NCBI GenBank assembly: GCA_026770705.1
Contig: JANJGN010000021.1
Coordinates: forward strand, 107,508,001 to 107,572,000
Source of the DNA: Isurus oxyrinchus
Lineage: Eukaryota
Length of the DNA: 64,000 nt
Reading direction: 5' to 3'
Part shown: in pieces, positions 217 through 57,598 of the stretch
Numbering within the stretch: position 1 is the first letter of the stretch
How the letters are laid out: each line of letters begins with the position of its first letter
Translations under genes and position numbers: made by a program
Notes under the pieces: generated by a model
Told to the model about the DNA's origin: nothing
What the model saw: only the letters and a program-made list of their open reading frames with translations
Databases searched by the model: none

Positions 217-243
217 CCTTAATGAGGATGATTGATGCTAAAG
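217..243 (+). CDS. Gene A (butyrophilin-like or TRIM-like): penultimate 27-nt phase-1 micro-exon (xLMRMIDAK)
   Basis: Polypyrimidine tract plus ttttcag acceptor and AAG|gtaaga donor. 27 nt, phase 1-1. Splices in frame (G+TT=Val) to the B30.2 exon at 4036. Same size class as gene B micro-exons. Confidence 0.75.
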
Positions 244-639
244 GTAAGATTTGCACCTCACAAGTGATTCCTTATTGAGTTGTGCGCACATGAGTGTGTG
301 TGTGAGAGAGAGTGTGCACGTGGAATTGGCCTCACCTTTTAGTATCATAGCATCTTATAGTACAGGAGGAGGCCATTCAGCCCATTGAATTTGTGCCGAC
401 TCTTTGAAAGAGCTGTTCAATTATTCCCACTCCCCTGCTCTTTCCCCATAGCCCTGTAAATATTGCCCTTTAAGTGTTACCTTGTTTGATTGCTGCGTTT
501 TTTTTCAATGTTTTATCCCCCTCTTGTTTTTTAACCAATAATCATCAACCTGTGTCCTCTGTTCCCAGTGACAGGAGGGGCAGCAACAAAAATTAATAAG
601 GAGGAGCTATTAAAGCTCCTGAACATGTTTATCAAATCC

Positions 640-1765
640 CCCCTTGAGAACATACGAATTAGGAGCAGAAGTAGGCCACTCGGCCCCTCAAGCCTGCTGC
701 ACCATTCAATAAGATCATGGCTGACTGGATTTTTAACCTCAACTCCATATTCCCACCCAGCTCCGATAATCTTTCACCCCCTTGCTTATCAAGAAACTAT
801 CTCGCTCTGCCTTAAAAATATTCAAAGACTCTGTTTCCACCACCTTTCGAGGAAGAGATTTCCAAAATCTAACCACCCTCTGAGAGAAAATACTTCTCAT
901 CTCTGTCTTAAATGGGTAACCCCTTATTTATAAACAGTGACCCCTATTTCTAGGTTGTCTCACAAGATGAAATGTCCTCTCCACATCCAGCCTGCCAAGA
1001 CCCCTCAGGATCTTATATGTTTCAATCAAGTCGCCTCTTGCTCTTCTAAACTCCAGCGGATATGAGCTAGCCTGTCCAGCATTTCCTCTGGACAACCCGC
1101 CCAATCCAAACCTTCCCTGAACTGCTTTCAACAGACTTACATCTTTCTTTAAATAAGGTAACCAACAATGTACATAGTACTCCAGATGTGGTCTCGCCAA
1201 TGCCCTGTATAACTGAAATATAACCTCTCTACTTTTGTATTCAGTTCCCCTCACAAATGAAAATATTCTATTAGCTTTCCTAATTACTTATTGTACCTTC
1301 ACTCCAAACCTTTGCGATTTATTCACTAGGACGTCCAGATTCCTCTGCATTTCAGAGCTCTGCAATCTCTCACGATTTAGAAAATATGCTTGTTTTTTAT
1401 TCTAACTGCCATAATGAATCATTTCACATTTTCCCACATTATACTCCATTTCCCAGATCTTTTCCCAATCCCCTAACTTAACTATATCCCTTTGTAGCCT
1501 CCTTATGTACTCTTCACAAGTTACTTCCCTACTTTTCTTTGTATCATCAGTAGTAAATTTAGCAACTATACCTTGGATCCCTTCATCCAGATCATTCATA
1601 TAAATTTTAAAATGTTGAGGCCTCGGCACTGATGCCTGTGGCACAACACTTGCTCCATCTTGCCAACCAGAAAAAGACTCATTTATGTTAGCCAGTCAAC
1701 CTTCTATCCATCCCAATATGTTACCACTACAGCATGAGCTTTTATTTTCTGAAATAACCTTTGAT
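640..1765 (-). mobile_element. CR1-type LINE 3' fragment, degenerate
   Basis: ORFs IYMNDLDEGI..VAKF..DDTK and LYRALARPHLEY..RGDLIETYKILRGL, plus a CR1 3' tail. Confidence 0.88.
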
Positions 1766-2278
1766 GGCAGTGATGGTAACTAGCAGTGGAGTTGCTCTCC
1801 CTTTTAATTTGTTATTATCTAGCCATGGTTACTCTCCCCTTTAAGTAAATATCACCTTTGCAGTGCCCATATTTTTACAGAGAATTTTACAACATAGAAT
1901 CAGGCTCATAAGACCCTCTACCTGATCTAAAAGTTCTTGCCTCTACTCCGCGTATCAATAGCACACAACTTGGATATTGTTCCATTAACGTAGTACTTTT
2001 ATTAATAACACTAAGCAATAGTACATACTCTCAATACTGATTACTTAGTAGCCTGGTGGGCTGGAGATCGTCTCAATGGTCAGTCCATTGATGAGGTCTC
2101 CGTACATGACTTCAGAGAGCCTGACCAAACTATTGTACCCACTACAGCAGTGAAGTCTCTGAGTTCTGTGGCATAAAAGGTAATATCTGTTTTTAGCTCA
2201 TAAAATTGGTTTTCAATTCCATCAGTGTCATTTCCCCTGTCCTTATGTCCTGAGCCTGAAGAATTCTACTTTGTCATG

Positions 2279-3277
2279 TGTTACGACCACATCAGATGTT
2301 AATGCTGAGCAAGCCAGATACCAGGGGGAACCTGTCTTACTGATCATAAACCTGTTTTTTTTTTTTGAAAATGAGGAGGTAAAGCTACTGACCCCAAAAG
2401 CGTAGGACTCCAGTAACACCATTAGGATTTTAAAAGTTAAAAGATTTATTAAAAAGAAAAAATCTTAAGCACATAAGATTAAAGTTACACAATTACAGAA
2501 TAACCCCCAAAATACCCACATAGATTTTAAAACCATGAAAATCCAGTAATATTAGCCAAAGCAAAGAATTGGTGTCACTTTCATAATGGTATACCACACT
2601 GACTCCTCAAACACTTGCACTCAGATGTGATAATCCAAAAAGGTTCAGAATCAAATTGCTTTTTGAAAACGGAGACTTTTCTGGCTTGAAACTGGGTGAC
2701 TGCTTCATATTCAAAACTTTCACACCTTCTCAGCACACAGATGTGATCTTCAGGACATTTCCCCACATAGTCACATCAACTTGGCTAAACATCTTATTTT
2801 AAATATCTTTATCCCTTTCATCTCAAATTCCCTTGCCCTCAACTTCTCCAAACATAAAAATCTGTTAAGTTTTCCTATTAACTCTATTTTCGGGTCAATA
2901 AAATTTACTATATCTTCCCCTGTTTACTTAATGAAATCTTTGTAATTTGTAAAAGTTCCTCGTCACTTCTTCCCTTTTGCAATTCAACAGCGGAAAAGCC
3001 AAGTCTCCACTTATAATGAAATTTTAAATTCAGCCTATTTACTTGTAACTCGAACATACCATAAACCCTCATTACAAATGCATGAGCCGAACACCTTTAC
3101 CTTTCTATCTCTTGGTTTTCATAAACAAGCTGTCTCTATTAACCTCCCCTAGTTTAATGAATCATGGACACGGACACGGATGGACACACACACATGGACA
3201 CACACACACACACACACCTTCCTTTACAGAATCCCACCATAATCCGAAAATTATAAGTAAAAACAACCATCATCACA
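2279..3277 (-). mobile_element. Solo LTR-like element resembling 62072-62990
   Basis: tgttacga..tcatcaca termini, tttatt near the left end and a similar AT-rich layout. TSD not clear. Confidence 0.5.
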
Positions 3278-4035
3278 GCTGTTACCAATCCTCAGGCTGG
3301 TCCAGACATAAAAACAAAGAAAACTGCGGTCCAGACAGACGCCTTCGTTATGTCTGATGAGCACAAAAGGTGGTCAATCTTTCTCACAGTTCGAGGCCAG
3401 TTCTCCTGCCCAATTTAATTCATTTTGCAGACCCTGTTAATTCTGGCAAGGCTGTGTCGTCTCTAATTTACCCACCCTGCGTGGCACCCACAATGCAGCT
3501 CTTTGTGTCCCCTTCTCTTCGATGTTCAATGTTTACCACATGAGACAGACTCAGCATATACAGGGCTACCAAGCCACCAGTCTACATTCATCAATACAGG
3601 AGAAACAGAGAATCTGTTACATGGTTAAAAGTGATGAATACATTAAAAAGAAAACAAATAACCCATTGGCTTGCAGGCCATTCACCCCAACTAACCTGTG
3701 CTGGTGTTTAGCTCTACACAAACCTCCTCGACCCTCTTCGTCTCACCCCATCATCATATCATTCTATTCATTTTTCCCCCAATGTGTTTAAGCAGCTTCC
3801 TCTTGAATGTAAAATATCGGGCTTGTCCAACCCACATTTGGCCCGCAAAACCCATATAATGAGGCCCCAGAGCTACTGTTCAAAATGCCGGTTAGACAAG
3901 TGCGTAATGTTTGGCCGCAGTTCCCTCTCCTTTTAAAATCCTGGCTTGTGTTGTTAGCCTCCCTTTTAAACAGCACTAAACCCAGTCCAGTGTCTGGGGT
4001 GCTAAACCTGTCCCTTGCTTTTTCATCCTTTTTAG

Positions 4036-4547
4036 TTGACTTCACCCTGGACGGTGACACTGCGAATCCAAACCTCCAGGTATCTTCCGATACCGTGAGC
4101 TACCCTGCAGTAGGAAAGATTCCCGCTGGCGTGTCCAGGTTATCCGTGCTGGGAAATAAAGGCTTCACCAGCGGGAAGCACTTCTGGGTGGTGGAAGTGA
4201 ACAGTCAGACCCCCTGGGACCTGGGAGTAGCCAGGAAGACAATGGTCAGGGAGGACGAGCCAGCTTTGAGCCCTGAAAACGGATACTGGACGATTGGGCA
4301 CGACGGGCGAAAATACTGGGCGAACGACACCAGCCCCTTGGAAATCTCCCTCGAACAGAATGTCCAGGAGATTGGAATATACATCAACTGCCACGCTGGG
4401 AAGGTCCTTTTATGCGATATGGCCACCCGTTCCCACCTCCACACTTTCACTGACAGCTTCGAGGAGCCGATCTACCCTTTCTTCAATCTCTCTCAGTCTG
4501 GGGAAATGTTAATTTCTTCGTCGATCACGAACTCCCTCAGACAATAG
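4036..4547 (+). CDS. Gene A terminal exon: B30.2 (PRY-SPRY) domain; upstream exons lie outside the window
   Basis: ttttag acceptor at 4035. Translation VDFTLDGDTANPNLQVS...VLGNKGFTSGKHFWVVEV...WDLGVA...LSPENGYWTIG...IGIY...IYPFF carries the hallmark PRY/SPRY motifs. Stop TAG at 4545-4547. Confidence 0.92.
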
Positions 4548-4968: not shown

Positions 4969-4974
4969 AATAAA
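4969..4974 (+). terminator. Candidate polyadenylation signal of gene A
   Basis: First AATAAA noticed after the stop codon, about 420 nt downstream. Confidence 0.4.
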
Positions 4975-19086: not shown

Positions 19087-21165
19087 GGTGTCAGTATTTA
19101 CAGGGGTCCCCAGGACCGTGTGCATATTTACAGGGGCCCCCGGGGGTGTGTCAGTATTTACAGGGGTCCCTGGGAGTGTGTCAGTATTTACAGAGAGTTC
19201 CCGGGGAGTGTGTCCGTATTTACAGGGGTCCCCAGGAGTGTGTCAGTATTTACAGGGGTCCCCAGGAGTGTGTCAGTATTTACAGAGAGTTCCCGGGGAG
19301 TGTGTCCGTATTTACAGGGGTCCCCGGGAGTGTGTCAGTATTTATGAGGTCTGTGGGGAGTGTGTCAGTATTTACAGGGGTCCCCGGGAGTGTGTCAGTG
19401 TTTACAGGTGTCCCCGGGAGTGTGTCAGTATTTACAGGGGTCCCTGGGAGTGTGTCAGTATTTACAGTGGTCCCTGGGAATGTGTCAGTATTTACAGGTG
19501 TGCCTGGGAGTGTGTCAGTATTTACTGGGATCCCTGTGAGTGTGTCAGTTTTTACAGATAGTTCCCAGGGAGTGTGTCAGTATTTACAGGAGTCCCCAGG
19601 AGTGTGCTTGTATTTATGGGGTCTCCAGGGAGTGTGTCAGTATTTACAGGGGACCTGGGGAGTGTGTCAGTATTTACAGGAGTCCCCAGGAGTGTGTTAG
19701 TATTTACGGGGTCTACAGGTAGTGTGTCAGTATTTACAGGGGTCCCCGGGGAGTGTGTCAGTATTTACAGGAGTCTTCAGGAGTGTGTTAGTATTTACGG
19801 GGTCTACAGGGAGTGTGTCCGTATTTACAGGGGTCCCCGGGGAGTGTGTCAGTATTTACAGGGGTTCCCAGGGAGTGTGTCAGTATTTACAGGGGTTCCC
19901 AGGGAGTGTGTCAGTATTTACAAGGGTTCCCAGGAGTGTGTTAGTATTTACGGGGTCTCCAGGGAGTGTGCCAGTATTTACAGGGGTCCCCCGGGAGTCT
20001 GTCAGTATTTACAGGGGTCCCCGGGCAGTCTGTCAGTATTTACAGGGGTCCCCGGGGAGTCTGTCAGTATTTACAGGGGTCCCTGGGGAGTGTGTCCATA
20101 TTTACAGGGGTCCCTGGGCGTGTGTCAGTATTTTCAGAAGGTTCCTGGGGAGAGTGTCAGTATTTACAGGGGTCCCCGGGGAGTCTGTCAGTATTTGCAG
20201 GGGTCCCTGGGGATTGTGTCCATATTTACAGGGGTCCCCAGGAGTGTGTCAGTATTTACAGGGTCTGTGGGGAGAGTGTCAGTATTTACAGGGTCTGTGG
20301 GGAGTGTGTCAGTATTTACTGGGTCTTTGGGGAGTGTGTCAGTATTTACAGGGTCTGTGGGGAGTGTGTCAGTATTTACTTGGTCTCTGGGGAATGTGTC
20401 AGTATTTACAGGGTCTGTGGGGAGTGTGTCAGTATTTACAGTGTCTCTGGGGAATGTGTCAGTATTTACAGGGTCTGTGGGGAGTGTGTCAGTATTTACA
20501 GTGTCTCTGGGGAGTGTGTCAGTGTTTACGGGGTCTGTGGGGAGTGTGTCAGTGTTTACGGGGTCTGTATGGAGTGTGAGAGTGTTTACGGGGTCTGTGG
20601 GGACTGTGTCAGTATTTACGGGGTCTGTATGGAGTGTGAGAGTGTTTACGGGGTCTGTGGGGAGTGTGTCAGTATTTACAGGGTCTGAATGGAGTGTGAG
20701 AGTGTTTACGGGGTCTGTGGGGAGTGTGTCAGTGTTTACGGGGTCTGTGGGGAGTGTGTCAGTATTTACAGGGTCTGTATGAGTGTGAGAGTGTTTACGG
20801 GGTCTCTGGGGACTGTGTCAGTATTTACGGGGTTTCTGGGGAGTGTGTCAGTATTTACGGGGTCTAAGTGATTGGGTCAGTATTTATGGGGTCTCTGGAG
20901 AATGAGTCAGTATTTACGGGATCTAAGGGGAGTGGGTCAGTGTTTACGGGGTCTGTGGTGAGTGTGTCAGTGTTTACGGGGTCTGTGGGGCATGTGTCAT
21001 TGTTTACGAGGTCTGTGGGGCGTGTGTCATTGTTTACGGGGTCTGTGGGGCGTGTGTCAGTGTTTACGGGGTCTGTGGGGCGTGTGTCAGTGTTTACGGG
21101 GTCTCTGGGGAGTGTGTCAGTGTTTACGGGGTTTAAGGGGTGGGTGCCACTGTTTACAGGGGTCT
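19087..21165 (+). repeat. 30/31-bp G-rich minisatellite, block 1 (about 70 units)
   Basis: Consensus GTGTGTCAGTATTTACAGGGGTCCCCGGGA, grading into GTGTGTCAGTGTTTACGGGGTCTSTGGGGA. Confidence 0.97.
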
Positions 21166-21902
21166 CAGATTTGCTGCATTCTGACTGGTTCCCAGGTTTG
21201 TGCTCTGACTGTCAGATTGTCAGTCATTGAGAATATTCCAGACTCAAAATTCTGTTAAAATGCTTTGACCCAAACGTCCCCAATTACGGACCACACCCTC
21301 CCTCAGTACAGAACAGCTCCTTTTATGAGTTACTTATAAGTGAGATAACTGGGAAACTTTGCAGTCTGTGTACAATGAACATGGGCCTCATCCCTGTTCA
21401 TTGTATTGTGATGAATAATTACAGAATGGACACACTGAACAGAGACTGCAGCCTAATAGAGGATAAAGGACACAGACTGATAAACCTGCGGGGGTGAGGG
21501 GTGTTGAGGGCAGGGAGGTGCTGGGGTGAGTGGGTGGGACACAGACTGTTTGCTAAACCCGGGAGTGGGGGCAATGTCCCACCTGATAAGCTGCTGAATA
21601 CAGAGTCAGTCTTAGCTTTCAAAAGGGAATTGGAAACATTGCACGGATGTGGGGCAGGAGGAGAGTGTGACTGACTGCATTGACCTTTGAAAGAGCCGGC
21701 GTTTTTTGATGGGCTGATTGGCCTCTTTCTATGCTGCATTGCCCTATGACTCCATGAAACAGTTTGCTGCACTGCTAGACTGTTCCCCTCTGGGGAGGTG
21801 ACTGATTTCAAATTTCATAGGAAGGGGAACGTGAGGGAATGTTAAGCAGTGGTTCATTTTACACACCGAGGAATTGTTGATTTACAGACAGTCCCTGTGG
21901 CA

Positions 21903-24900
21903 GGTGTCAGTATTTACAGGGGTCCCAGGAGCGTGTGCATATTTACAGGGGTCCCCGGGAGTGTGTCCGTATTTACAAGGGTTCCTAGGAATGTGTCAGT
22001 ATTTACAGGGGTCCCCGGGAGTGTGTCCGTATTCACTGGGGTCCCCGGGAGTGTGTCCGTATTTGCAGGGGTCCCCGGGAGTGTGTTGGTATTTACTGGG
22101 GTCCCCGAGAATGTGTCCGTATTTACAGAGAATTCCCTGGGCTTGTGTCAGTATTTACAGGTGTCACCGGGAGTGTGTCAGTATTTACAGGGGTCCCTGG
22201 GAGTGTGTCAGTATATACAGGTGTCCCCGGGAGTGTGTCAGTGTTTACAGGTGTCCCCGGGAGTGTGTCAGTGCTTACAGGTGTCCCCGGGAGTGTGTCA
22301 GTATTTACAGATAGTTCCCAGGGAGTGTGTCAGTATTTACAGGAGTCCCCAGCAGTGTGTTAGTATTTACGGGGTCTCCAGGGAATGTGTCAGTATTTAC
22401 AGGGGACCTGGGGAGTGTGTCAGTATTTACAGGAGTCCCCAGGAGTGTGTTAGTGTTTACGGGGTCTACAGGGAGTGTGTCAGTATTTACAGGAGTCCCC
22501 AGAGAGTGTGTCAGTGTTTACAGGGGTCCCCAGGAGTGTGTCAGTATTTACAGGGTCTGTGGGGAGAGTGTCAGTATTTACAGGGTCTGTGGGGAGTGTG
22601 TCAGTATTTACTGGGTCTCTGGGGAATGTGTCAGTATTTACAGGGTCTGTGGGGAGTGTGTCAGTATTTACAGTGTCTCTGGGGAGTGTGTCAGTATTTA
22701 TGGGGTCTCTGGGTAATGAGTCAGTATTAACGGGGTCTAAGGGGAGTGGGTCACTATTTATGGGGTCTCTGGGGAGTGTGTCAGTATTTACGGGGTCTCT
22801 GGGGTGTGTGTCAGTGTTTACGGTGTCTCTGGGGTGTGTGTCAGTGTTTACGGTGTCTCTGGGGTGTGTGTCAGTGTTTACGGTGTCTCTGGGGTGTGTG
22901 TCAGTGTTTACGGGGTCTCTGGGGAGTGTGTCAGTGTTTACGGGGTCTGTGGGGAGTTGTCAGTATTTACAGGGTCTCTGGGGACTGTGTCAGTGTTTAC
23001 TGGGTCTGTGGGGAGTGTGTCAGTATTTACGGGGTCTCTGGGGAGTGTGTCAGTGTTTACGGGGTCTAAGTGATTGGGTCAGTATTTATGGGGTCTCTGG
23101 AGAATGAGTCAGTATTTACGGGATCTAAGGGGAGTGGGTCAGTGTTTACGGGGTCTGTGGTGAGTGTGTCAGTGTTTATGGGGTCTGTGGGGCCTGTGTC
23201 AGTGTTTATGGGGTCTATTGGGAGTGTGTCAGTGTTTACGGTGTCTTTGGGGAGTGTGTCAGTATTTACAGGGGTCCATAGGATCCTGTCTGTATTTACA
23301 GAGAGTTCCCGGGGAATGTGTCAGTATTTTGAGGGGTCCCTGGTAGTGTGTCAGTATTCACAGGGGTCCCCGGGAGTGTGACCGTTTTTACAGGGGTCCC
23401 CGGGAGTGTGTCAATATTTACAAGGGTCCCCAGGAGTGTGTTAGTATTTACAGGGGTCCCCGGGGAGTGTGTCAGTATTTACAGAGAGTTCACATTGAAT
23501 GTGTCAGTATTTACAGAGAGTTCCCATGGAATGTGTCAGTATTTACAGGGGTCCCCGGGAGTGTGACCATTTTTACAGGGGTCCCCGGGAGTGTGTCAGT
23601 ATTGACAAGGGTCCCCGGGAGTGTGTCAGTATTTACAGGGGTCCCCGGGGAGTGTGTCAGTATTTACAGTGGTCTCCGGGGAGTGTGTCAGTATTTACAG
23701 GGGTCCCCGGGGAGTGTGTCAGTATTTACAAAGAGTTCACATTGAATGTGTCAGTATTTACAGAGAGTTCCCATGGAATGTGTCAGTATTTACAGGGGTC
23801 CACGGGAGTGTGACCATTTTTACAGGGGTCCCCGGGAGTGTGTCAGTATTGACAAGGGTCCCCGGGAGTGTGTCAGTATTTACAGAGTTCCCATGGAATG
23901 TGTCAGTATTTACAGGGGTCCCCGGGAGTGTGACCGTTTTTACAGGGGTCCCCGGGAGTGTGTCAGTATTTACAGGGGTCCCTCGGGAGTGTGTCCGTAT
24001 TTACAGGGGTCCCCGGGAGTGTGTCCGTATTTACAGGGGTCCCCGGGAGTGTGTTGGTATTTACTGGGGTCCCCGAGAATGTGTCCGTATTTACAGAGAA
24101 TTCCCTGGGCTTGTGTCAGTATTTACAGGTGTCACCGGGAGTGTGTCAGTATTTACAGGGGTCCCTGGGAGTGTGTCAGTATATACAGGTGTCCCCGGGA
24201 GTGTGTCAGTGTTTACAGGTGTCCCCGGGAGTGTGTCAGTGCTTACAGGTGTCCCCGGGAGTGTGTCAGTATTTACAGATAGTTCCCAGGGAGTGTGTCA
24301 GTATTTACAGGAGTCCCCAGCAGTGTGTTAGTATTTACGGGGTCTCCAGGGAATGTGTCAGTATTTACAGGGGACCTGGGGAGTGTGTCAGTATTTACAG
24401 GAGTCCCCAGGAGTGTGTTAGTGTTTACGGGGTCTACAGGGAGTGTGTCAGTATTTACAGGAGTCCCCAGAGAGTGTGTCAGTGTTTACAGGGGTCCCCA
24501 GGAGTGTGTCAGTATTTACAGGGTCTGTGGGGAGAGTGTCAGTATTTACAGGGTCTGTGGGGAGTGTGTCAGTATTTACTGGGTCTCTGGGGAATGTGTC
24601 AGTATTTACAGGGTCTGTGGGGAGTGTGTCAGTATTTACAGTGTCTCTGGGGAGTGTGTCAGTATTTATGGGGTCTCTGGGTAATGAGTCAGTATTAACG
24701 GGGTCTAAGGGGAGTGGGTCACTATTTATGGGGTCTCTGGGGAGTGTGTCAGTATTTACGGGGTCTCTGGGGTGTGTGTCAGTGTTTACGGTGTCTCTGG
24801 GGTGTGTGTCAGTGTTTACGGTGTCTCTGGGGTGTGTGTCAGTGTTTACGGGGTCTCTGGGGAGTGTGTCAGTGTTTACGGGGTCTGTGGGGAGTGTGTC

Positions 24901-27622: not shown

Positions 27623-28358
27623 TCAGATTTGCTGCATTCTGACTGGTTCCCAGGTTTGTGCTCTGACTGTCAGATTGTCAGTCATTGAGAATATTCCAGA
27701 CTCAAAATTCTGTTAAAATGCTTTGACCCAAACGTCCCCAATTACGGACCACACCCTCCCTCAGTACAGAACAGCTCCTTTTATGAGTTACTTATAAGTG
27801 AGATAACTGGGAAACTTTGCACTCTGTGTACAATGAACATGGGCCTCATCCCTGTTCATCGTATCGTGATGAATAATTACAGAATGGACACACTGAACAG
27901 AGACTGCAGCCTAATAGAGGATAAAGGACACAGACTGATAAACCCGCGGGGGTGAGGGGTGTTGAGGGCAGGGAGGTGCTGGGGTGAGTGGGTGGGACAC
28001 AGACTGTTTGCTAAACCCAGGAGTGGGGGCAATGTCCCACCTGATAAGCTGCTGAATACCGTCAGTCTTAGCTTTCAAAAGGGAATTGGAAACATTGCAC
28101 GGATGTGGGGCAGGAGGAGAGTGTGACTGACTGCATTGACCTTTGAAAGAGCCGGCGTTTTTCAATGGGCTGATTGGCCTCTTTCTATGCTGCATTGCCC
28201 TATGACTCCATGAAACAGTTTGCTGCACTGCTAGACTGTTCCCCTCTGGGGAGGTGACTGATTTCAAATTTCAGAGGAAGGGGAACGTGAGGGAATGTTA
28301 AGCAGTGGTTCATTTTACACTCCAAGGAATTGTTGATTTACAGACAGTCCCTGTGGCA

Positions 28359-31300: not shown

Positions 31301-34075
31301 TCCCCAGGAGTGTGTTAGTATTTACGGGGTCTCCGGGAAGTGTGTCAGTATTTACAGGTGTCCCCGGGCAGTCTGTCAGTATTTACAGGGGTCCCCGGGG
31401 AGTCTGTCAGTATTTACAGGGGTCCCTGGGGAGTGTGTCCATATTTACAGTGGTCCCTGGGCGTGTGTCAGTATTTTCAGAAAGTTCCTGGGGAGAGTGT
31501 CAGTATTTACAGGGGTCCCCACGAGTGTGTCAGTATTTACAGGGTCTGTGGGGAGTGCGTCAGTATTTACAGGGGTCCCCAGGAGTGTGTCAGTATTTGC
31601 AGGGGTCCCCAGGAGTGTGTCAGTATTTACAGGGTCTGTGGGGAGTGTGTCAGTATTTACCGGGTCTCTGGGGAATGTGTCAGTATTTACAGGGTCTGTG
31701 GGGAGTGTGTCAGTATTTACCGGGTCTCTGGGGAGTGTGTCAGTATTTACGGGGTCTCTGGGGAGTGTGTCAGTACTTACGGGGTCTCTGGGGTGTGTGT
31801 CAGTATTTACGGGGTCTCTGGGGAGTGTGTCAGTATTTATGGGGTCTGTAGGGAATGTGTCAGTATTTACGGGGTCTAAGAGGAGTGGGTCAGTATTTAT
31901 GGCGTCTCTGGAGAATGAGTCAGTATTTACGGGGTCTAAGGGGAGTTGTCACTATTTATGGGGTCTCTGGGGAATGTGTCAGTGTTTATGGGGTCTCTGG
32001 GGAGTGTGTCAGTGTTTACGGGGTCTCTGGGGAGGGTGTCAGTGTTTACGGGGTCTCTGGGGAGTGTGTCAGTGTTTACGGGGTCTCTGGGGAGTGTGTC
32101 AGTGTTTACGGGGTCTCTGGGGACTGTGTCAATGTTTACAGGGTCCCTGGGGACTGTGTCAGTGTTTACGGGGTTTCTGGGGACTATGTCAGTGTTTACC
32201 CGGTCTGTGGGGAGTGTGTCAGTGTTTATGGGGTCTGTGGGTCGTGTGTCAGTGTTTACGGGGTCTGTGGGGCGTGTGTCAGTGTTTATGGGGTCTGTGG
32301 GGCATGTGTCTGTGTTTACAGGGTCTCTGGGTAGTGTGTCAGTGTTTACGGGGTCTTTGGGGAGTGTGTCAGTATTTACAGGGGTCCCCGGGAGTATGTC
32401 CATATTTACAGGGGTCCACGGGAGCGTGTCCGTATTTACAGAGAGTTCCCGGGTAATGTGTCAGTATTTTCAGGGGTCCCCGGGAGTGTGTCAGTATTTA
32501 CAGGGGTCCCCGGGAGTGTGACCGTTTTTACAGGGGTCCCCGGGAGTGTGTCAGTATTTACAGAGAGTTCCCTGGGCTTGTGTCAGTATTTACAGGTGTC
32601 CCGGGGATGTGTCAGTGTTTACAGGTGTCCCCGGGAGTGTGTCCGTATTTGCAGGGGTCCCCGGGAGTGTGTCCGTATTTACAGAGAGTTCCCTGGGCTT
32701 GTGTCAGTATTTACAGGTGTCCCGGGGCATGTGTCAGTGTTTACAGAGGTACCTGGGAGTGTGTCAGTATTTACAGAGAGTTCTTGGGGAGTCTGTCAGT
32801 ATTTACGGGGTCTCGGACGTGTGTCAGTATTTATAGAGTCTCTGGTGAGTGTGTCAGTATTTACAGGGATCCCCAGGAGTGTGTCAGTATTTACGGGGTC
32901 TCTGGGGAGTGCGTCTGTATTTAGGGGGTCTCTGGGGAGTGCGTCTGTATTTACAGGATCTGTGGGGAGTGTGTCAGTATTTAGGGGTCTCAGGCATGTG
33001 TCAGTATTTATAGGGTCTCTGGGGAGTGTGTCAGTATTTACAGGGGTCCCCGGGAGTGTGTCAGTATTTACAGGGGTCCCCGGGAGTGTGTCAGTATTTA
33101 CAGGGGTCCCCGGGAGTGTGTCAGTATTTACAGGGGTCCCCGGGAGTGTGTCAGTATTTACAGGGGTCCCTGGGAGTGTGTCAGTATTTACAGGTGTCCC
33201 TGGGTGTGTGTCAGTATTTACAGGGGTCCCTGGGTTTATGTCAGTATTTACAGGGATCCCTGGGTGTGTGTCAGTATTTACAAGGGTCCTTGGGTTTGTG
33301 TCAGTATTTACAGGTGTCCCTGGGTAAGTGTCAGTATTTACAGGGGTCCCTGGGAGTGTGTCAGTATTTACAGGGGTCCCTGGGGAGTGTGTCAGTATTT
33401 ATAGGGTCTCTGGGGAGTGTGTCAGCATTTACAGGGGTCCCCGGGCATGTGTCAGTATTTACAGGGGTCCCGGGGATTGTGTCAGTATTTACGGGGTCTC
33501 TGGGGAGTGTGTCAGTATTTACGGAGTCTCTAGGGAGTGTGTCAGTATTTACGGGGTCTCTAGGGAGTGTGTCGGTGTTTACGGGGTCTGTGGGGAGTGT
33601 GTCAGTATTTACGGGGTCTGTGGGGACTGTGTCAGTATTTACGGGGTCTGTGGGGAGTGTGTCAGTGTTTACGGGGTCTCTGGGGAGTGTGTCAGTATTT
33701 AGGGGGTCTCTGGGGAGTGTGTCAGTATTTAGAGGGGTTCCTTCGTGTGTGTCAGTATTTACAGGGGTCCCCGGGCATGTGTCAGTATTTAAAAGGGGTC
33801 CTGGGGAGTGTGTCAGTATTTATTGAGGGGTCGTGGGAAGTGTGTCAGTATTTACGGGGTCTCTGGGAAGTGTGTCAGTGTTTACGGGGTCTCTGGGGAG
33901 TGTGTCAGTGTTTACGGGGTCTCTGGGAACTGTGTCATTGTTTACGGGGTCTCTGGGGAGTGTGTCAGTGTTTACAGGGTCTCTGGGGGGTGTGTCAGTG
34001 TTTACAGGGTCTCTGGGGAGTGTGTCAGTGTTTATGGGGTCTAAGGGGTGAGTGTCATTGTTTACAGTGGCCTCA
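28359..34075 (+). repeat. 30/31-bp minisatellite, block 3 (about 190 units)
   Basis: Same unit and the same sub-variants. Confidence 0.97.
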
Positions 34076-35431: not shown

Positions 35432-35501
35432 ATGTTCAGGCGGATGGGGCCCCAAGCCCTGTTTCTGATTCTCCTCTTCAGGATCCATTCTGCACTTAGA
35501 G
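35432..35501 (+). CDS. Gene B signal-peptide exon (MFRRMGPQALFLILLFRIHSALR); exon starts at 35397
   Basis: tttcag acceptor at 35396, ATG at 35432 (AGGATG, purine at -3), hydrophobic core LFLILLF, donor AG|gtgaga, phase 1. Confidence 0.8.
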
Positions 35502-37410: not shown

Positions 37411-37764
37411 ATGTGTTCAGAGTTACTGGTCCTGAAGCCCCTGTCATTGCCATGCTTGGGGGGGTGGCAGTGTTGGAATGCCAGCTAATTCCGGAGAGAC
37501 CCCCGAATGGCATGGAATTACAGTGGGCCCGCAGTGATTCAGAACGTCATACCCCCATCCACAGGTACATCTTTGGGCAGGATGTGGAGGAGCAGTTAAC
37601 TGATGCCTACAGAGGGAGGACTGAGTTCTATAAGGATGAATTTAACCAGGGGAATGTCTCCCTCAAACTGAAGAATGTGAGGCTGCAGGATGAAGGCAGC
37701 TATCTGTGTATGGTCGAGCATGAGAACATCATCCAGCAAACATCCATTAAGCTGCAAGTGGCCA
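37411..37764 (+). CDS. Gene B IgV exon
   Basis: ctcctcag acceptor and A|gtaagt donor. DVFRVTGPEAPVIA..LECQL..MELQW..YRGRT..GNVSLKLKNVRLQDEGSYLC..LQVA is a BTN/MOG-type V-set domain with C-W-C and DxGxYxC. N-glycosylation sequon NVS. Confidence 0.95.
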
Positions 37765-37799
37765 GTAAGTCACACTGCTCACTAAAGAACCGTCTCTCC

Positions 37800-39510: not shown

Positions 39511-39529
39511 ACTAAACTTGAGTACAGCA

Positions 39530-41008: not shown

Positions 41009-41296
41009 GCTTTGGCGACCGCCCTGCGATACGATTGGACGGCTACCGCGCGGACGGAATCGGGCTCCAATGTGATTCGTCCAGCTGGTACCCTGCCCCC
41101 GCGTTGTACTGGACAGACGAGAACGGCAAGGACGTGACGGACGAAGCCACGACCAAGCCAGTGCAGAGCACGGGGGGTCTCTACAGCATCTCCAGCACCA
41201 TTGAGGTAACGGGCGTCTCTGCCAGCAGCAACTTTAAGTGCCTGGTGAACAGCAACATCTTGAAACATTCGCAGGAGAGCAGCCTCCGGATCCCAG
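41009..41296 (+). CDS. Gene B IgC exon
   Basis: ccgtag acceptor and CAG|gtcagt donor. SFGDRPAIRLDGY..GIGLQCDSSSWYPAPALYWTDENG..GLYSISS..FKCLVNS is a BTN/B7-type C domain. 288 nt. Confidence 0.93.
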
Positions 41297-42582: not shown

Positions 42583-42702
42583 ATGAATTCTTCCCCAGGA
42601 TGTCGAAATTCTTCACCGTTTTCATCCTGTTTCTCATCGTGCTCCTGGGATTAATGGCTGGAGCAGGGTACTACCAGTTCAGAAAGTGGACAGATATGAA
42701 AG
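42583..42702 (+). CDS. Gene B transmembrane exon
   Basis: tttccag acceptor and AAG|gtatga donor. DEFFPRMSKFFTVFILFLIVLLGLMAGAGYYQFRKWTDMK has the BTN-typical FFP before the hydrophobic helix and basic RK after it. Confidence 0.92.
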
Positions 42703-44863: not shown

Positions 44864-44890
44864 AGTTACGCAGTCGGCCAGCGCTTGAAA
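44864..44890 (+). CDS. Gene B micro-exon 1 (27 nt, ELRSRPALE)
   Basis: ctctttcag acceptor, A|gtaagt donor, phase 1-1, no stop. Confidence 0.8.
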
Positions 44891-47665: not shown

Positions 47666-47692
47666 AATTCAAATCTGTAATGGAGCTACAAG
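47666..47692 (+). CDS. Gene B micro-exon 2 (27 nt, KFKSVMELQ)
   Basis: ttttattgcag acceptor, AAG|gtaaga donor, phase 1-1. Confidence 0.8.
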
Positions 47693-52166: not shown

Positions 52167-52187
52167 AGGTGCTCAAGGGCAATGTTG
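52167..52187 (+). CDS. Gene B micro-exon 3 (21 nt, EVLKGNV)
   Basis: Poly-T plus cag acceptor, TTG|gtgagt donor, phase 1-1. Confidence 0.8.
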
Positions 52188-54183: not shown

Positions 54184-54184
54184 C

Positions 54185-54830: not shown

Positions 54831-54964
54831 TTGTGAAAGATCTTTCTATCTCTCCCTGGATAGTGAAAACTTCATTTGATCCAGTTTCTGTAGATTTGTA
54901 CAAACACGAACATCATTTCTCTACCGTCAAACTAATTTGCTTCTTTTATTTTATTTTCCCTCAG

Positions 54965-54985
54965 ATAATGCTGAAGCTAATTTAC
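54965..54985 (+). CDS. Gene B micro-exon 4 (21 nt, DNAEANL)
   Basis: Branch-like actaat, long pyrimidine tract, tcag acceptor, C|gtaagt donor, phase 1-1. Confidence 0.78.
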
Positions 54986-55449: not shown

Positions 55450-55488
<39 letters not shown>

Positions 55489-55713
55489 TTTATTAGGAAT
55501 ACTATTGGATTTTCATGTCTGGAAGTAACAGCTGGGCTGAGACCAGGGTGAAGTTGGGCAGTGTGAGGGAAAGTGGAAATAGGCGGCCTTGTCGGGTCTT
55601 TCTGATTGGATGACCTTTGATGGAGGATGGTAGGCTTTCACATTTGAATGGAGCATTGAATATGTCACAGCAACCTGGTATTTTATTAAAAAGGTAATTT
55701 TTCTTCATTACAG

Positions 55714-55740
55714 TTCGTGAGAAGATGCTGTCTAAAATAG
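55714..55740 (+). CDS. Gene B micro-exon 5 (27 nt, LREKMLSKI)
   Basis: ttacag acceptor, AG|gtaagt donor, phase 1-1. Confidence 0.8.
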   Translation, partial: FVRRCCLK

Positions 55741-55865
55741 GTAAGTCTCACTGGGCAGTGCTGGCCTAAGAGTGTGTCGGTTTCTCTGCTTCCTTCACCC
55801 ACAGTGTGTTATACCATAGGATCTTCAGAGCCAAGCTCCTCCTGTCAGAGTGGGGCTGGATAAAC

Positions 55866-56100
55866 CTGTGGGTTATCTCACTGCCCTATCATTCACTGGG
55901 TACATGATTGAATCTAGTGTCGATATTTGGGGTAGGGTGTAGCTGTGGGTTACCACACTGTCCTAACGCTCATTGAAGGTGTGATTGAGTCCAGTGTGGA
56001 TCTGATGGGGTAGGATGGTGCTATGGGTTATCACAGCTCTATCGCTCAATGGAAACTAGTGTGGAAGATGGGACGCTCTTGGTTCTCTGGGTTAACACAC
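55866..56100 (+). repeat. Degenerate ~77-bp tandem repeat (about 3 copies)
   Basis: The pattern ct(g/a)tgggtta.c.cac...cta.c..tca.tg...tgattga.tc.agtgt.gat recurs. Confidence 0.6.
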
Positions 56101-56452
56101 CAGCTGCCAATGGAGTGTTACTGAACCTCCTGAATGTACCTGGACAGAGATTCCTCAATTCTCATCGTTAGAGCCAGAAGTTACAGATAAGAAAAGGCCA
56201 ATGATCCAACAAAGCCCATCCCTCCAGAAGGTTCAGTTCTTCCCATCAGCAACATTCCCAAATCTAAAATCCTTCCTTGACATGAATGGAAGGACAATGG
56301 CAGCCACTTGGTTTCTGGAATATTCTGCCCTGTGTTAAACTGAGGCTGAATATGTTAAAGGAATACTTGTCAAGATATGAATCAAACTGTGTTGTAGTGG
56401 ACTGAGGAACTGGTTTGATAATCATAAAACATTTACCTCTTTGTGTTTTCAG

Positions 56453-56479
56453 CTGCCGAGCGGGTCATCACTGCCGCAG
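56453..56479 (+). CDS. Gene B micro-exon 6 (27 nt, AAERVITAA)
   Basis: ttttcag acceptor, CAG|gtgaga donor, phase 1-1. Confidence 0.82.
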
Positions 56480-57083
56480 GTGAGAAACACTTTCCAGTCA
56501 TTTTCCTTACTTTCTTCCCAGGTTTCCCAGGCCTCAAATTGTGGGAATTCTCTCATCAACCACTCCCTTCAGGCTTAACATAACAAACGCTGGCCTTGGC
56601 AGCGGTGCCCAAACTCTGTGTAAGAATACAGGAAAAAAAAATCCTTTAATAATATTCAACTCACCAACTGAATCATTCCTTAATCTTCGAAATACAAGGG
56701 ACTACAAAACTGGACATCATTTAACCATTAGGCTCGGTTTATTCTGGTGCATCCCCCGCTCCAAGGCCAGTGTAGCCTTCCTCTGGTACTGTGCCCAGAA
56801 CACGGTTTCTGTAGATGGTGTCTGGCCACAGCGCTGTACAATTGCAGCAAAATTCCACCCCTTTGATTCTAGACCCCTTGAGATATAGGGAGAGGGCACG
56901 GGACATGGGACTAATTGAATAACTGTACCAAGCTGCTAACACACACGTGAAAGGCCAAGTGGTCTCCTCATTGCTGGACCGTGCCATGATTCCGTTAACC
57001 CCTTTGTGTACCTGTCCACTCATCCTCAGTGATTTTTGGACAATGGCAAAGTCCTGACCTGTGACCTCCTTTTGTGTTGCCAG

Positions 57084-57598
57084 TTCCTGTGACCTTCGAC
57101 CCCAAGACGGCCAACCCCTATCTGAAGGTCTTGGAGGACCGGCTGACCGTGATTTTCAACGACGATTGGCAGGAACTTCCACAAAGCTCAAAGAGGTTCA
57201 ACTCCCGTCTCTTTGTGATGGCGAAGGAGGGGTACAAGACAGGGAGCCAGTACTGGGAGGTGCTGGTGGGCAACAAACCAGACTGGGATCTGGGAGTGGT
57301 CAGGGAGTCCATTCCCAGGGACGACTGGGTTACCCTGAGCCCGGAGAACGGATACTGGACCATTGGGAAGCGTGGCGATTCCTACGAGGCCAATCTCACT
57401 TCTCCTGAATCCATCACGTGCAATTCAAGTGCTCAAAGGATCGGTATCTACCTGAACTGTGAGGATGGGGTGGTTCGGTTCTATAATGCCGATGACATGG
57501 TGCAAATCTACAACTTCAGCGCTACATTCACCGAGAAAATCTACCCATTCTTCAGCCCTTGGGGATCCCGAGAGGTCATGAAAATCTGTCCTTTGTAG
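57084..57598 (+). CDS. Gene B terminal exon: B30.2 (PRY-SPRY) domain
   Basis: ttgccag acceptor. VPVTFDPKTANPYL..RFN..GSQYWEVLV..WDLGV..LSPENGYWTIG..RIGIYL..VRFYN..IYPFFSP..ICPL followed by the stop. Confidence 0.95.

What the first reader, a model, noticed from the sequence alone, without database searches (positions are those of the whole stretch)
217..57598. Tandem pair of B30.2-bearing butyrophilin-like genes in an apparently cartilaginous-fish genome
Seen: a complete spliceable SP-IgV-IgC-TM-stalk-B30.2 gene, and upstream of it the tail of a diverged paralogue with the same micro-exon plus B30.2 ending. The two B30.2 domains share LSPENGYWTIG and WDLGV. Established: mammalian BTN/BTNL proteins act as heteromeric pairs from linked genes (BTN2A1/BTN3A1, BTNL3/BTNL8, Btnl1/Btnl6) to select and activate gamma-delta T cells, and sharks have gamma-delta TCRs. 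Inference: this may be an ancient BTN heteromer / gamma-delta regulatory module. The ORF track misses it because six exons are only 21-27 nt.
Basis: partly seen in the sequence, partly recalled or inferred. Interest (0 to 1): 0.78.

Follow-up and report, generated by a model that had tools for sequence, protein, structure and literature searches.

The report
Shark butyrophilin gene pair
The window holds the end of one butyrophilin gene and all of a second, transcribed one in a shark; relatives are already annotated in other sharks, but the two genes sit side by side in sharks and rays, as cooperating butyrophilin pairs do in mammals.

Summary

**Gene B (35432-57598, + strand)** is a complete butyrophilin-type gene:
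- It has a leader, IgV, BTN-type IgC and TM exon, six phase-1 micro-exons (27, 27, 21, 21, 27, 27 nt) and one PRY-SPRY exon.
- Spliced contigs from RNA-like public runs of two related organisms join E7-E8-E9-E10-E11 at exactly the predicted GT..AG borders.
- Contig lengths and RefSeq orthologues (Heterodontus, Scyliorhinus torazame, 74% identity) fit the remaining exons.

**Gene A (217-243 and 4036-4547)** is the 3' end of a second butyrophilin, not a TRIM:
- Its B30.2 is 94% identical to Carcharodon carcharias "BTN1A1-like" proteins, which carry IgV-IgC-TM.
- It lies in a well-supported clade whose full-length members all carry Ig domains.

**The pair:** A and B are 40% identical. Each forms its own clade holding both sharks and rays. 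They are neighbours in Mustelus, two Chiloscyllium species, Heterodontus and probably Narcine. So the pair predates the shark-ray split.

**Limits:** the heteromer and gamma-delta T cell role was not tested. Butyrophilins in cartilaginous fish, and their place on the MHC chromosome, are already published (PMC12841164) and named in RefSeq. This is a new member of a known kind with a testable extra. Other notes of this scan list BTN/BG-like genes elsewhere in this genome, but not this pair.

The parts
217..243 (+). Gene A, last micro-exon (27 nt, phase 1-1, AG/GT borders); codes 8 whole codons of the stalk
   Evidence: Sequence. It is the only hit of the micro-exon rule on the + strand outside gene B. 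It matches the peptide just before the B30.2 domain of Carcharodon P0187 in 7 of 8 residues.
4036..4547 (+). Gene A, PRY-SPRY (B30.2) exon with stop codon
   Evidence: Pfam SPRY 1.1e-14, PRY weak. PDB best hit BTN2A2 at 1.4e-25. 94.4% identical over 160 aa to Carcharodon BTN1A1-like. Member of the A clade, support 100/99.
19088..34065 (.). 15-kb satellite of a 30-bp unit (494.5 copies, 77% matches) in the A-B intergenic space. Context only, not part of either coding region.
   Evidence: Tandem Repeats Finder. It produces dozens of spurious ORFs.
35432..35501 (+). Gene B, E1: start codon and signal peptide (70 nt coding, donor GAG|GTGAGA, phase 1). An AG at 35395-35396 suggests the exon starts at 35397, behind an upstream non-coding exon.
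   Evidence: Scan and sequence. The leader matches S. torazame P0161 in 14 of 23 residues and Heterodontus P0152 in 10 of 23. No reads were laid on it.
37411..37764 (+). Gene B, E2: IgV exon (354 nt, phase 1-1)
   Evidence: Pfam V-set 3.5e-14. PDB hits CD276, MOG, BTNL2, BTN3A. 74% identical to Heterodontus P0152. Borders.
41009..41296 (+). Gene B, E3: IgC exon (288 nt, phase 1-1)
   Evidence: Pfam C2-set_3 1.7e-14. PDB hits CD276, BTN3A, BTN2A1. 69% identical to S. torazame. Borders.
42583..42702 (+). Gene B, E4: transmembrane exon (120 nt, phase 1-1)
   Evidence: The only phase-1 exon candidate with a strong hydrophobic stretch and good splice sites (Kyte-Doolittle 2.72, donor 7 of 9). 56-59% identical to orthologues.
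44864..44890 (+). Gene B, E5: micro-exon, 27 nt
   Evidence: Collinear match to orthologue stalks (LxxRPxxx motif). No reads were laid on it.
47666..47692 (+). Gene B, E6: micro-exon, 27 nt
   Evidence: Weak sequence match, but its length fits exactly the gap between the E5 and E8 matches in Heterodontus P0152. No reads were laid on it.
52167..52187 (+). Gene B, E7: micro-exon, 21 nt
   Evidence: The E7|E8 joint 52186>54964 (GT..AG, cut +1) is seen in contigs of X4 and X6.
54965..54985 (+). Gene B, E8: micro-exon, 21 nt
   Evidence: Joints to E7 and E9 (tables 5 and 5c). 6 of 6 residues identical to Heterodontus.
55714..55740 (+). Gene B, E9: micro-exon, 27 nt
   Evidence: X4 joint 54984>55714. 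In X6 the 25 letters standing between 54985 and 56451 are this exon in organism B (table 5c).
56453..56479 (+). Gene B, E10: micro-exon, 27 nt
   Evidence: Joint 56476>57081 (GT..AG, cut +3) in X4 and X6. 8 of 8 residues identical to the B part of Chiloscyllium plagiosum P0159.
57084..57598 (+). Gene B, E11: PRY-SPRY (B30.2) coding part with stop codon
   Evidence: Pfam PRY 2.1e-14 and SPRY 5.1e-18. PDB best hit BTN3 at 1.1e-34. Covered by contigs of 4 of 4 runs laid. 73.5% identical to Heterodontus and S. torazame.
57599..58088 (+). Gene B, 3' untranslated region (minimum extent)
   Evidence: The X4 contig covers up to 57800, the end of the stretch laid, and has 288 more letters. The X6 contig has 1522 more (table 8).

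Best explanation
The window, from a lamniform shark close to the great white, holds two neighbouring butyrophilin (BTN) genes on the + strand.

Gene B is complete and expressed. It codes a type I membrane protein of about 500 residues: a signal peptide, a B7-like IgV-IgC ectodomain, one membrane span, a roughly 50-residue stalk, and a cytosolic PRY-SPRY (B30.2) domain. The stalk is built from six 7- or 9-codon micro-exons, the heptad layout typical of BTN genes.

Gene A is the last two exons of a second BTN. Its Ig and TM exons lie upstream of the window.

A and B are old paralogues (40% identity in B30.2). They arose before sharks and rays split and have stayed side by side since.

Shown: domain content, exon structure, splicing of E7-E11, orthology, conserved adjacency.

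Inferred from the mammalian family: the proteins sit in the membrane as coiled-coil dimers, present the IgV face to receptors on lymphocytes, and use the B30.2 domain as an intracellular sensor or adaptor. Whether the dimer is A with B is open. I put about 15-20% on an obligate A/B heteromer.
For: - Domains and borders of gene B.
- Micro-exons far above chance: (6 hits in 14.4 kb, against 1, itself gene A's micro-exon, in 49.6 kb of the same strand, and 2 in 64 kb of the other strand).
- Spliced contigs: in X4 (organism A, 1 other letter in 720) and X6 (organism B, 17 other letters and 1 gap in 720) they join E7|E8 and E10|E11 at GT..AG. E8|E9|E10 is seen through table 5c. Four intron bins have depth 0 in all four runs.
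- Contig length: the X4 contig has 914 letters in front of E11. E2 to E10 of the model sum to 912 (arithmetic mine).
- Orthologues of B with the same architecture: Heterodontus P0152, S. torazame P0161, and Pristiophorus, Mustelus, Pristis, Hypanus, Mobula, Rhinoraja. The E5, E8, E9 and E10 peptides match Heterodontus in order, with exactly the spacing that E6 and E7 need.
- Gene A: 94.4% identical to Carcharodon BTN1A1-like proteins that have V-set and C2-set_3 domains. The A clade has 14 rows with support 100/99 and the B clade 6 rows with 100/99; each holds sharks and batoids (the 87-row tree agrees).
- Adjacency: read-through models are A+B in C. plagiosum P0159 and A-Ig/TM+B in Mustelus P0190. 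Consecutive identifiers on one contig occur in Heterodontus (XP_067865485/6 and 487), C. punctatum (chiPu_0016831/2; XP_072406179 and 182/3) and Narcine (XP_069771711/712).
Against: - E1-E6 joints and any transcript of gene A were not seen directly. The one reads call covered 51900-57800 only.
- The runs are labelled 'RNA?' by guess. I call them RNA from the spliced joints and the empty introns.
- Gene A's Ig/TM exons are outside the window, so a truncated copy in this species is not excluded.
- Gene A's PRY is below Pfam's cut-off and lacks 5 residues present in Scyliorhinus. Mustelus lacks them too, and the Carcharodon sequence reads the same as the window there by eye.
- The position aligned with the His of the EWHIGV motif of alpaca BTN3 is Asp in B and in A. 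From recall, that His belongs to the phosphoantigen site, so a BTN3A1-like phosphoantigen sensor is not supported.
- PMC12841164 argues that BTNs persist in squamates without gamma-delta T cells, so a gamma-delta role cannot be assumed.
Confidence: 0.88

Rival explanations
1. A and B are an obligate heteromer, the elasmobranch counterpart of BTN2A1/BTN3A1 or BTNL3/BTNL8. They need each other to reach the surface and together engage a gamma-delta TCR.
For: Two distinct lineages are kept next to each other, on the same strand, in sharks and rays. Mammalian linked pairs do form heteromers: titles and abstract starts of PMC5798315, PMC4717187 and PMC7387338 in the listing, and PDB entries holding BTN2A1 with BTN3A chains and BTNL3 with BTNL8. 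By eye, the stalks of the A and B parts of P0159 are of similar length.
Against: There is no test of interaction, co-expression or receptor binding. Tandem paralogues often stay adjacent without pairing. A third BTN-like unit follows the pair in C. plagiosum and Narcine models, so the locus is a cluster rather than a strict pair. [quoted passage not shown]
Confidence: 0.17
2. Gene A in this species is a truncated or decaying copy: a B30.2 tail without a working Ig/TM part, or an unexpressed pseudogene.
For: Only two exons are visible. PRY scores below Pfam's cut-off. RefSeq models of the A type in S. canicula and Mustelus are short and lack Ig. No expression data were obtained for A.
Against: The 169-codon frame is open and 94.4% identical to the expressed-looking, multi-isoform Carcharodon gene, with a short end branch of 0.041. 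The short Mustelus model is an annotation artefact, because the A-type Ig-TM exons were attached to the neighbour's model P0190. The micro-exon keeps perfect splice sites.
Confidence: 0.08
3. Gene A is a TRIM (RING-B-box-coiled coil-B30.2) or another non-BTN B30.2 gene.
For: B30.2 domains of BTNs and class IV TRIMs are close. TRIM7, TRIM21 and pyrin score only a little below BTNs in PDB. In 157 proteins screened, 32 had a RING pattern and no Ig match, against 29 with Ig.
Against: None of the 14 rows of the A clade has a RING, and 10 of the 14 carry Ig domains. The other 4 are the window row itself and 3 short or partial models. The nearest relative (94%) has IgV-IgC-TM.
Confidence: 0.02

Closest known systems
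RefSeq 'butyrophilin subfamily 1 member A1-like' of Carcharodon carcharias (XP_041069412-419; P0187, P0170, P0169)
   Same: Orthologue or near-orthologue of gene A. It is 94.4% identical over 160 aa of the B30.2, and the peptide in front of it matches the window micro-exon in 7 of 8 residues. Isoforms X1 and X2 differ by 9 residues in the stalk, the size of one 27-nt micro-exon.
   Different: It is not identical, so the window is a different species, allele or very recent copy. The window shows only the last two exons.
RefSeq 'butyrophilin subfamily 3 member A1-like' of Heterodontus francisci (XP_067865487, P0152) and Scyliorhinus torazame (XP_072331698, P0161)
   Same: Orthologues of gene B, with the same order of leader, IgV, IgC, TM, stalk and B30.2. 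Identity to P0152 / P0161: IgV 74 / 73%, IgC 61 / 69%, B30.2 73.5 / 73.5%. Stalk length is the same as the six window micro-exons.
   Different: Different orders of sharks. Names were given by automatic annotation and do not mean orthology to human BTN3A1.
Human BTN3A1 / BTN2A1 (and BTNL3/BTNL8, mouse Btnl1/Btnl6)
   Same: Same architecture and same use of 21/27-nt heptad exons. They are the best PDB matches of the B30.2 (1e-34) and high matches of IgV and IgC. The genes are linked on the MHC chromosome (PMC12841164 for cartilaginous fish; unchecked scan notes for this genome).
   Different: About 40% identity or less. No orthology is shown. The His of the BTN3 EWHIGV motif is Asp here. Heteromer formation and a gamma-delta TCR role are shown in mammals only.
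Class IV TRIM proteins (TRIM7, TRIM21, TRIM39, A33-like) and pyrin
   Same: The PRY-SPRY domain has a similar sequence (E-values 1e-30 to 1e-18) and sits in a single 3' exon.
   Different: Gene B has Ig and TM exons and no RING or B-box. Gene A's clade holds no RING protein.

Membership tests
Butyrophilin (BTN/BTNL) family - gene B | N-terminal signal peptide followed by an IgV domain of the B7/BTN/MOG type | tested here: met
   Leader 35432-35501. V-set 3.5e-14. PDB hits CD276, MOG, BTNL2, BTN3A1.
Butyrophilin (BTN/BTNL) family - gene B | Membrane-proximal IgC domain of the BTN type | tested here: met
   PF22705 C2-set_3 1.7e-14. PDB hits BTN3A and BTN2A1.
Butyrophilin (BTN/BTNL) family - gene B | Single transmembrane segment between the Ig domains and the cytosolic part | tested here: met
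   Exon 42583-42702, hydrophobic window 2.72, phase 1-1. No dedicated TM predictor was run.
Butyrophilin (BTN/BTNL) family - gene B | Juxtamembrane stalk coded by short 21/27-nt phase-1 exons (heptad units). This feature is recalled from the mammalian genes; heptad repeats are mentioned in PMC12841164. | tested here: met
   Six micro-exons, four of them confirmed by spliced contigs.
Butyrophilin (BTN/BTNL) family - gene B | C-terminal PRY-SPRY (B30.2) domain in one exon | tested here: met
   PRY 2.1e-14 and SPRY 5.1e-18. BTN3 1.1e-34.
Butyrophilin (BTN/BTNL) family - gene B | One transcript joins the Ig exons to the B30.2 exon | tested here: inconclusive
   E7-E11 joints are seen. The link to E2-E6 rests on contig length (914 letters against 912 expected) and on orthologue models, not on laid reads.
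Butyrophilin (BTN/BTNL) family - gene A | IgV-IgC-TM exons upstream of the B30.2 exon | not testable with these tools
   These exons would lie outside the window. The Carcharodon relative (94% identical) and 9 other rows of the A clade have them.
Butyrophilin (BTN/BTNL) family - gene A | PRY-SPRY exon preceded by phase-1 micro-exon(s) | tested here: met
   217-243 and 4036-4547. SPRY 1.1e-14; PRY only 0.0035.
BTN heteromeric pair acting on gamma-delta T cells (BTN2A1/BTN3A1, BTNL3/BTNL8, Btnl1/Btnl6) | Two different linked BTN genes | tested here: met
   A and B are on one strand, about 31 kb between A's stop and B's start. Adjacency is conserved.
BTN heteromeric pair acting on gamma-delta T cells (BTN2A1/BTN3A1, BTNL3/BTNL8, Btnl1/Btnl6) | Physical heteromer, co-dependent surface expression, effect on gamma-delta T cells | not testable with these tools
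   This needs co-expression, co-precipitation and T cell assays. No multimer prediction is on offer.
BTN3A1-type phosphoantigen sensor | Basic pocket in the B30.2 including the His of the EWHIGV motif (residue role recalled, not from a call) | tested here: not met
   The aligned position is Asp in B and in A (WDLGV). The other pocket residues were not mapped.
Class IV TRIM | RING, B-box and coiled coil in front of the B30.2 | tested here: not met
   Gene B has Ig/TM exons instead. For gene A this was judged through its clade only: 0 of 14 rows with a RING.

The most novel reading that the evidence does not exclude
The A/B pair is a fixed two-gene unit, kept adjacent since before the shark-ray split, whose products work only as an A/B heteromer. 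If so, paired butyrophilins, not single ones, would be the ancestral way in which jawed vertebrates display a germline-encoded ligand to gamma-delta (or other innate-like) T cells. The mammalian BTN2A1/BTN3A1 and BTNL pairs would then be late re-inventions or descendants of that design.
Probability: 0.15. Interest if true: 0.7.

Novelty: new member of a known kind. Interest (0 to 1): 0.4.

Why it matters
Butyrophilins are central to how mammals select and trigger gamma-delta T cells, and they do so as pairs of different family members coded by neighbouring genes. How old that design is remains unknown.

The presence of BTN genes in cartilaginous fish is already in print and in RefSeq, so the genes themselves are not news. 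The added points are these:
- Elasmobranchs keep two distinct BTN lineages side by side in sharks and rays.
- At least one of the two (B) is transcribed, with all of its tested micro-exons used.

That gives a concrete, cheap experiment: co-express shark A and B, then test surface trafficking and binding to shark gamma-delta TCRs. It would show whether paired BTN action is ancestral.

The locus also shows how automatic annotation breaks on such genes (micro-exons skipped, neighbours fused, tails split off). That matters for anyone counting BTN genes across vertebrates.

Tried and rejected
**Leader inside ORF 37317-39515.** It reads through from an ATG into the IgV exon. I rejected it as the start. 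The only phase-compatible donor would leave a 24-nt intron, a strong pyrimidine tract with AG sits at 37410, and the leader at 35432-35501 matches the orthologue leaders. The rest of that 732-aa ORF is a CT-rich repeat in intron 2.

**Gene A as a B30.2-only or TRIM gene.** I took this seriously after the first word search gave only short models without Ig. It was rejected.

**'Gene A evolves unusually fast'.** The 87-row tree suggested this (end branch 0.41). It was an artefact of missing lamniform sequences; with them the branch is 0.041.

**Are A and B sister lineages?** Unresolved in both trees. The one Callorhinchus protein in my set falls in neither clade, so I cannot say whether the split predates chimaeras.

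**Species.** It could not be named, because run and organism names are coded.

**Literature.**
- (butyrophilin, shark, B30.2): 11 papers.
- (butyrophilin, cartilaginous fish, MHC): 10 papers.
- a loose six-term search, uninformative.
- (butyrophilin, heteromer, jawed vertebrates, gamma delta): 122 papers, 15 listed.
- None describes a conserved BTN gene pair or a BTN heteromer in cartilaginous fish.
- PMC12841164: I read parts 1-2 of 4 of the whole text, plus passages.
- PMC11788884, PMC7348870, PMC8664049 and PMC10751288: passages only. PMC10751288 has no BTN or TRIM in its main text.
- The heteromer papers: listing and abstract starts only.
- Supplements are closed. Figure S2 of PMC12841164 (its BTN tree) may already show the two elasmobranch clades.

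**Not done.**
- No structure prediction or fold search; they were not needed for the question.
Every search used single exons of the window or public proteins returned by the tools.

Full report
**1. What is in the window**

The 64-kb window has no N. The ORF list shows four informative frames on the + strand: 3885-4547, 37317-39515, 41035-41313 and 57074-57598. Pfam assigns them as follows:
- 3885-4547: SPRY (1.1e-14), with a weak PRY (0.0035).
- 37317-39515: V-set (3.5e-14).
- 41035-41313: the butyrophilin-type IgC family C2-set_3 (1.7e-14).
- 57074-57598: PRY (2.1e-14) plus SPRY (5.1e-18).

Solved structures give the same picture:
- The 57-kb B30.2 is closest to BTN3 and BTN3A1 (1.1e-34), then TRIM21 and pyrin.
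- The IgV is closest to CD276, MOG, BTNL2 and BTN3A.
- The IgC is closest to CD276, BTN3A and BTN2A1.
- The 4-kb B30.2 is closest to BTN2A2, pyrin, BTN3A and BTN2A1.

**2. Gene B model**

I read the borders from the sequence and scanned for phase-compatible exons.

| Exon | Coordinates | Content |
|---|---|---|
| E1 | 35432-35501 | leader |
| E2 | 37411-37764 | IgV |
| E3 | 41009-41296 | IgC |
| E4 | 42583-42702 | TM |
| E5 | 44864-44890 | micro-exon, 27 nt |
| E6 | 47666-47692 | micro-exon, 27 nt |
| E7 | 52167-52187 | micro-exon, 21 nt |
| E8 | 54965-54985 | micro-exon, 21 nt |
| E9 | 55714-55740 | micro-exon, 27 nt |
| E10 | 56453-56479 | micro-exon, 27 nt |
| E11 | 57084-57598 | PRY-SPRY and stop |

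Every internal border is AG/GT and every junction is phase 1.

The ATG at 37317, which reads straight into the IgV exon, is not the start:
- The only phase-compatible donor would leave a 24-nt intron.
- A strong acceptor sits at 37410.
- The 35.4-kb leader resembles the leaders of the orthologues.

**3. Are the micro-exons more than chance?**

I applied one fixed rule: length 21 or 27, at least 11 of 14 pyrimidines before the AG, and a donor match of at least 7 of 9.
- Between the TM and B30.2 exons (14.4 kb) there are six hits, all open in phase 1.
- The remaining 49.6 kb of the + strand has one hit, and it is gene A's micro-exon at 217-243.
- The whole minus strand has two hits.

**4. RNA evidence**

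The B30.2 exon with some 3' flank (57084-57700) is held by 16 listed runs from 6 studies and two coded organisms. None is on record as RNA.

I laid four runs (X4, X5 and X10 of organism A, X6 of organism B) on 51900-57800. All are Logan contigs.
- Contigs of X4 and X6 skip 52186>54964 (GT..AG, cut +1) and 56476>57081 (GT..AG, cut +3). These are exactly E7|E8 and E10|E11.
- X4 joins 54984>55714 with one letter between, which is E8|E9.
- X6 has 25 letters between 54985 and 56451. These are E9 in organism B, too short to be laid.
- Four intron bins have depth 0 in all four runs. I therefore treat the runs as RNA, although the tool calls that a guess.
- X5 and X10 show pieces of the B30.2 exon only.
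- The X4 contig (1919 letters, 1 other letter in 720) has 914 letters in front of E11. E2 to E10 of my model sum to 912.
- The X6 contig (3401 letters) has about 1160 letters in front and 1522 behind position 57800.
- So the 3' UTR is long. The 5' UTR in organism B is about 180 nt, if its exons have the same lengths.

The joints of E1 to E6 lie outside the stretch laid and were not seen.

**5. Gene A**

The exon 217-243 (27 nt) has a strong acceptor and donor. The B30.2 exon starts at 4036 behind a pyrimidine tract and AG. The junction codon is Val, as in gene B.

No other Ig or B30.2 exon is in the window.

**6. Relatives of gene A**

- *Word search with A's B30.2:* 10 proteins with E <= 1e-10 among 27 candidates. 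The best are three elasmobranch proteins at about 61% identity that RefSeq or GenBank models as short proteins without Ig.
- *Profile-free search of 1.84 billion representatives:* 3107 hits at E <= 0.001, of which 150 are listed.
- *Pfam on 10 of those 150:*
  - 5 have V-set, C2-set_3 and PRY/SPRY. They include the two closest full-length ones: P0020 of Chiloscyllium punctatum and P0040 of Pristis pectinata.
  - 2 have RING.
  - 3 have PRY/SPRY only.
- *Screen of all 157 proteins then held:* 29 with an Ig match, 32 with a RING pattern only, 96 with neither.
- *Second word search, with the B30.2 part of P0020:* 29 proteins at E <= 1e-30 among 848 candidates. It brought full-length A-type proteins of Rhincodon, Heterodontus, Cetorhinus, Carcharodon, Pristiophorus and Hemitrygon.
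- *Closest relative:* the window's A is 94.4% identical over 160 aa to the Carcharodon proteins and 83.5% to Cetorhinus.
- *Architecture of the Carcharodon proteins:* leader, IgV, IgC, TM and stalk. The peptide just before the B30.2 matches the window micro-exon in 7 of 8 residues.

So the window comes from a lamniform shark close to the great white, and gene A is a butyrophilin.

**7. Relatives of gene B**

| Orthologue | IgV | IgC | B30.2 |
|---|---|---|---|
| Heterodontus P0152 | 74% | 61% | 73.5% |
| S. torazame P0161/P0112 | 73% | 69% | 73.5% |

A third word search (9 proteins at E <= 1e-40 among 164 candidates) adds Pristiophorus, Mustelus, C. punctatum, Pristis, Hypanus, Mobula and Rhinoraja. 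No Carcharodon B-type protein came up.

In Heterodontus, the best ungapped matches of E5, E8, E9 and E10 lie at 285-292, 310-315, 317-324 and 326-333. That leaves exactly the room that E6 and E7 need with their split codons. E6 and E7 themselves match only weakly.

**8. Trees**

*First tree (87 rows).*
- Rows came from the 162 proteins with a B30.2 domain (226 domains).
- I kept all proteins with an Ig match or a species name, plus the first 22 RING-only proteins. I left out P0112, P0160 and P0162.
- The careful tree gives an A clade of 8 rows (100/99) and a B clade of 6 rows (100/100).

*Second tree (34 rows).*
- Rows came from 30 hand-picked proteins and included the new lamniform and other sequences.
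- A clade: 14 rows, 100/99, holding Pristiophorus, three batoids, Heterodontus, lamniforms, carcharhiniforms and orectolobiforms. Window A pairs with Carcharodon at 100/94.
- B clade: 6 rows, 100/99, holding four sharks and Narcine besides the window.

Both lineages therefore predate the shark-ray split. Whether A and B are each other's closest relatives is not resolved. The one Callorhinchus protein in the set falls in neither clade.

**9. Adjacency elsewhere**

- P0159 of Chiloscyllium plagiosum (1265 aa) is a read-through model. It holds a whole A-type protein, then a B-type protein from its IgV onward, then part of a third BTN.
- P0190 of Mustelus asterias (868 aa) is an A-type leader-IgV-IgC-TM, then filler, then a whole B-type protein. 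This also explains why the A-type tail there was modelled as a short protein.
- Consecutive identifiers on one contig link A and B in:
  - Heterodontus: XP_067865485/486 and 487.
  - C. punctatum: chiPu_0016831 and 0016832; XP_072406179 and 182/183.
  - Narcine: XP_069771711 and 712.

These last three cases are therefore inference from numbering.

**10. How it probably works**

Shown here: B is a transcribed type I membrane protein gene with a B7-like ectodomain, a stalk coded by six 7- or 9-codon exons, and a cytosolic B30.2.

Inferred from the mammalian family (recalled, and from the titles and abstract starts listed):
- Such proteins dimerise through the stalk and ectodomain.
- They show the IgV face to lymphocyte receptors.
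- They use the B30.2 as an intracellular sensor or adaptor.

A BTN3A1-like phosphoantigen pocket is not supported. The position aligned with the His of the EWHIGV motif of alpaca BTN3 is Asp in B and in A. The role of that His is recalled, and the other pocket residues were not mapped.

An A/B heteromer is possible and fits the conserved adjacency, but nothing here tests it.

**11. What is known**

- PMC12841164 (2026; I read parts 1-2 of 4 and passages) reports:
  - butyrophilins in all jawed vertebrates tested, including four cartilaginous fishes;
  - a variable number of heptads;
  - lineage-specific duplications;
  - location on the MHC class I chromosome in Hemiscyllium, Carcharodon and Hypanus.
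- PMC11788884 (passages) lists the Ig+SPRY pair as a gnathostome domain-shuffling product.
- RefSeq already names the orthologues.
- In four searches I found no paper describing two conserved, adjacent BTN lineages, or a BTN heteromer, in cartilaginous fish. Supplements were closed, and Figure S2 of PMC12841164 may show the clades.
- Unchecked notes of this scan place MHC class I genes 7.4-14.3 Mb, and a class II gene 27.8 Mb, before this window on the same piece. They also list other BTN/BG-like genes on other pieces.

**12. Verdict**

The tandem BTN pair, ancient and conserved, holds. The heteromer and gamma-delta function is untested.
- Novelty: a new member of a known kind.
- The conserved A/B adjacency is a modest new point that makes a long-standing question (how old is paired BTN action?) testable. 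Interest 0.4.

Noticed in passing
window 19088-34065: A 15-kb satellite of a 30-bp unit (494.5 copies, 77% matches, strong GC skew) fills half of the space between gene A and gene B. It produces dozens of long spurious ORFs on the + strand.
   Followed up: no
window 35380-35431: A pyrimidine tract and AG end at 35396, 35 nt before gene B's start codon. The organism B contig has about 180 nt of 5' UTR. Together these suggest at least one upstream non-coding exon; compare scan note s1-871263 at 8140-8500. The X4 contig begins only 2 letters before E2, which may mean alternative first exons or an assembly break.
   Followed up: partly
window 37765-39515 (intron 2): A CT-rich low-complexity repeat (periods 10 to 129) keeps the IgV frame open for 732 codons. 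It mimics a proline/serine-rich tail, but it is intronic according to the splice sites and the orthologues.
   Followed up: partly
window 52688-54263 (intron 7): Contigs of all four runs pile up here at depths of hundreds to tens of thousands, with many fixed differences. This is an abundantly transcribed interspersed repeat, not part of the gene. A 36-bp tandem repeat follows at 54458-54788.
   Followed up: no
window 35432-35501 versus P0187, P0168 (Carcharodon, Cetorhinus A-type): By eye, the signal peptides of the A-type and B-type genes are much more alike than the rest of the proteins (which are 40% identical in B30.2). This may point to gene conversion or shared constraint at the 5' ends.
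   Followed up: no
window 57270-57290 and 4215-4235: The residue aligned with the His of the EWHIGV motif of alpaca BTN3 is Asp in both genes (WDLGV). This agrees with scan note s1-871298 on a charge change in the pocket. The other pocket residues were not mapped.
   Followed up: partly
P0159 (C. plagiosum), P0190 (Mustelus), P0028 (Narcine), P0001/P0002, P0191: RefSeq and GenBank models of this locus are often wrong. Neighbours are fused into 868-1645 aa proteins, A-type tails are split off as 217-266 aa proteins with meaningless N-termini, and micro-exons are skipped (461-aa model). Counts of BTN genes in sharks taken from annotation will be off.
   Followed up: partly
window 9204-10773: A 418-aa ORF lies on the minus strand (9296-10552). 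It is flanked by near-identical ORFs in opposite orientation (9204-9554 + and 10468-10773 -), i.e. an inverted duplication. The scan's other notes call this a nested Penelope element.
   Followed up: no
P0187 versus P0170 (Carcharodon A-type isoforms): The two isoforms differ by 9 residues in the stalk, the size of one 27-nt micro-exon. Micro-exon skipping may therefore tune stalk length in the A gene.
   Followed up: no
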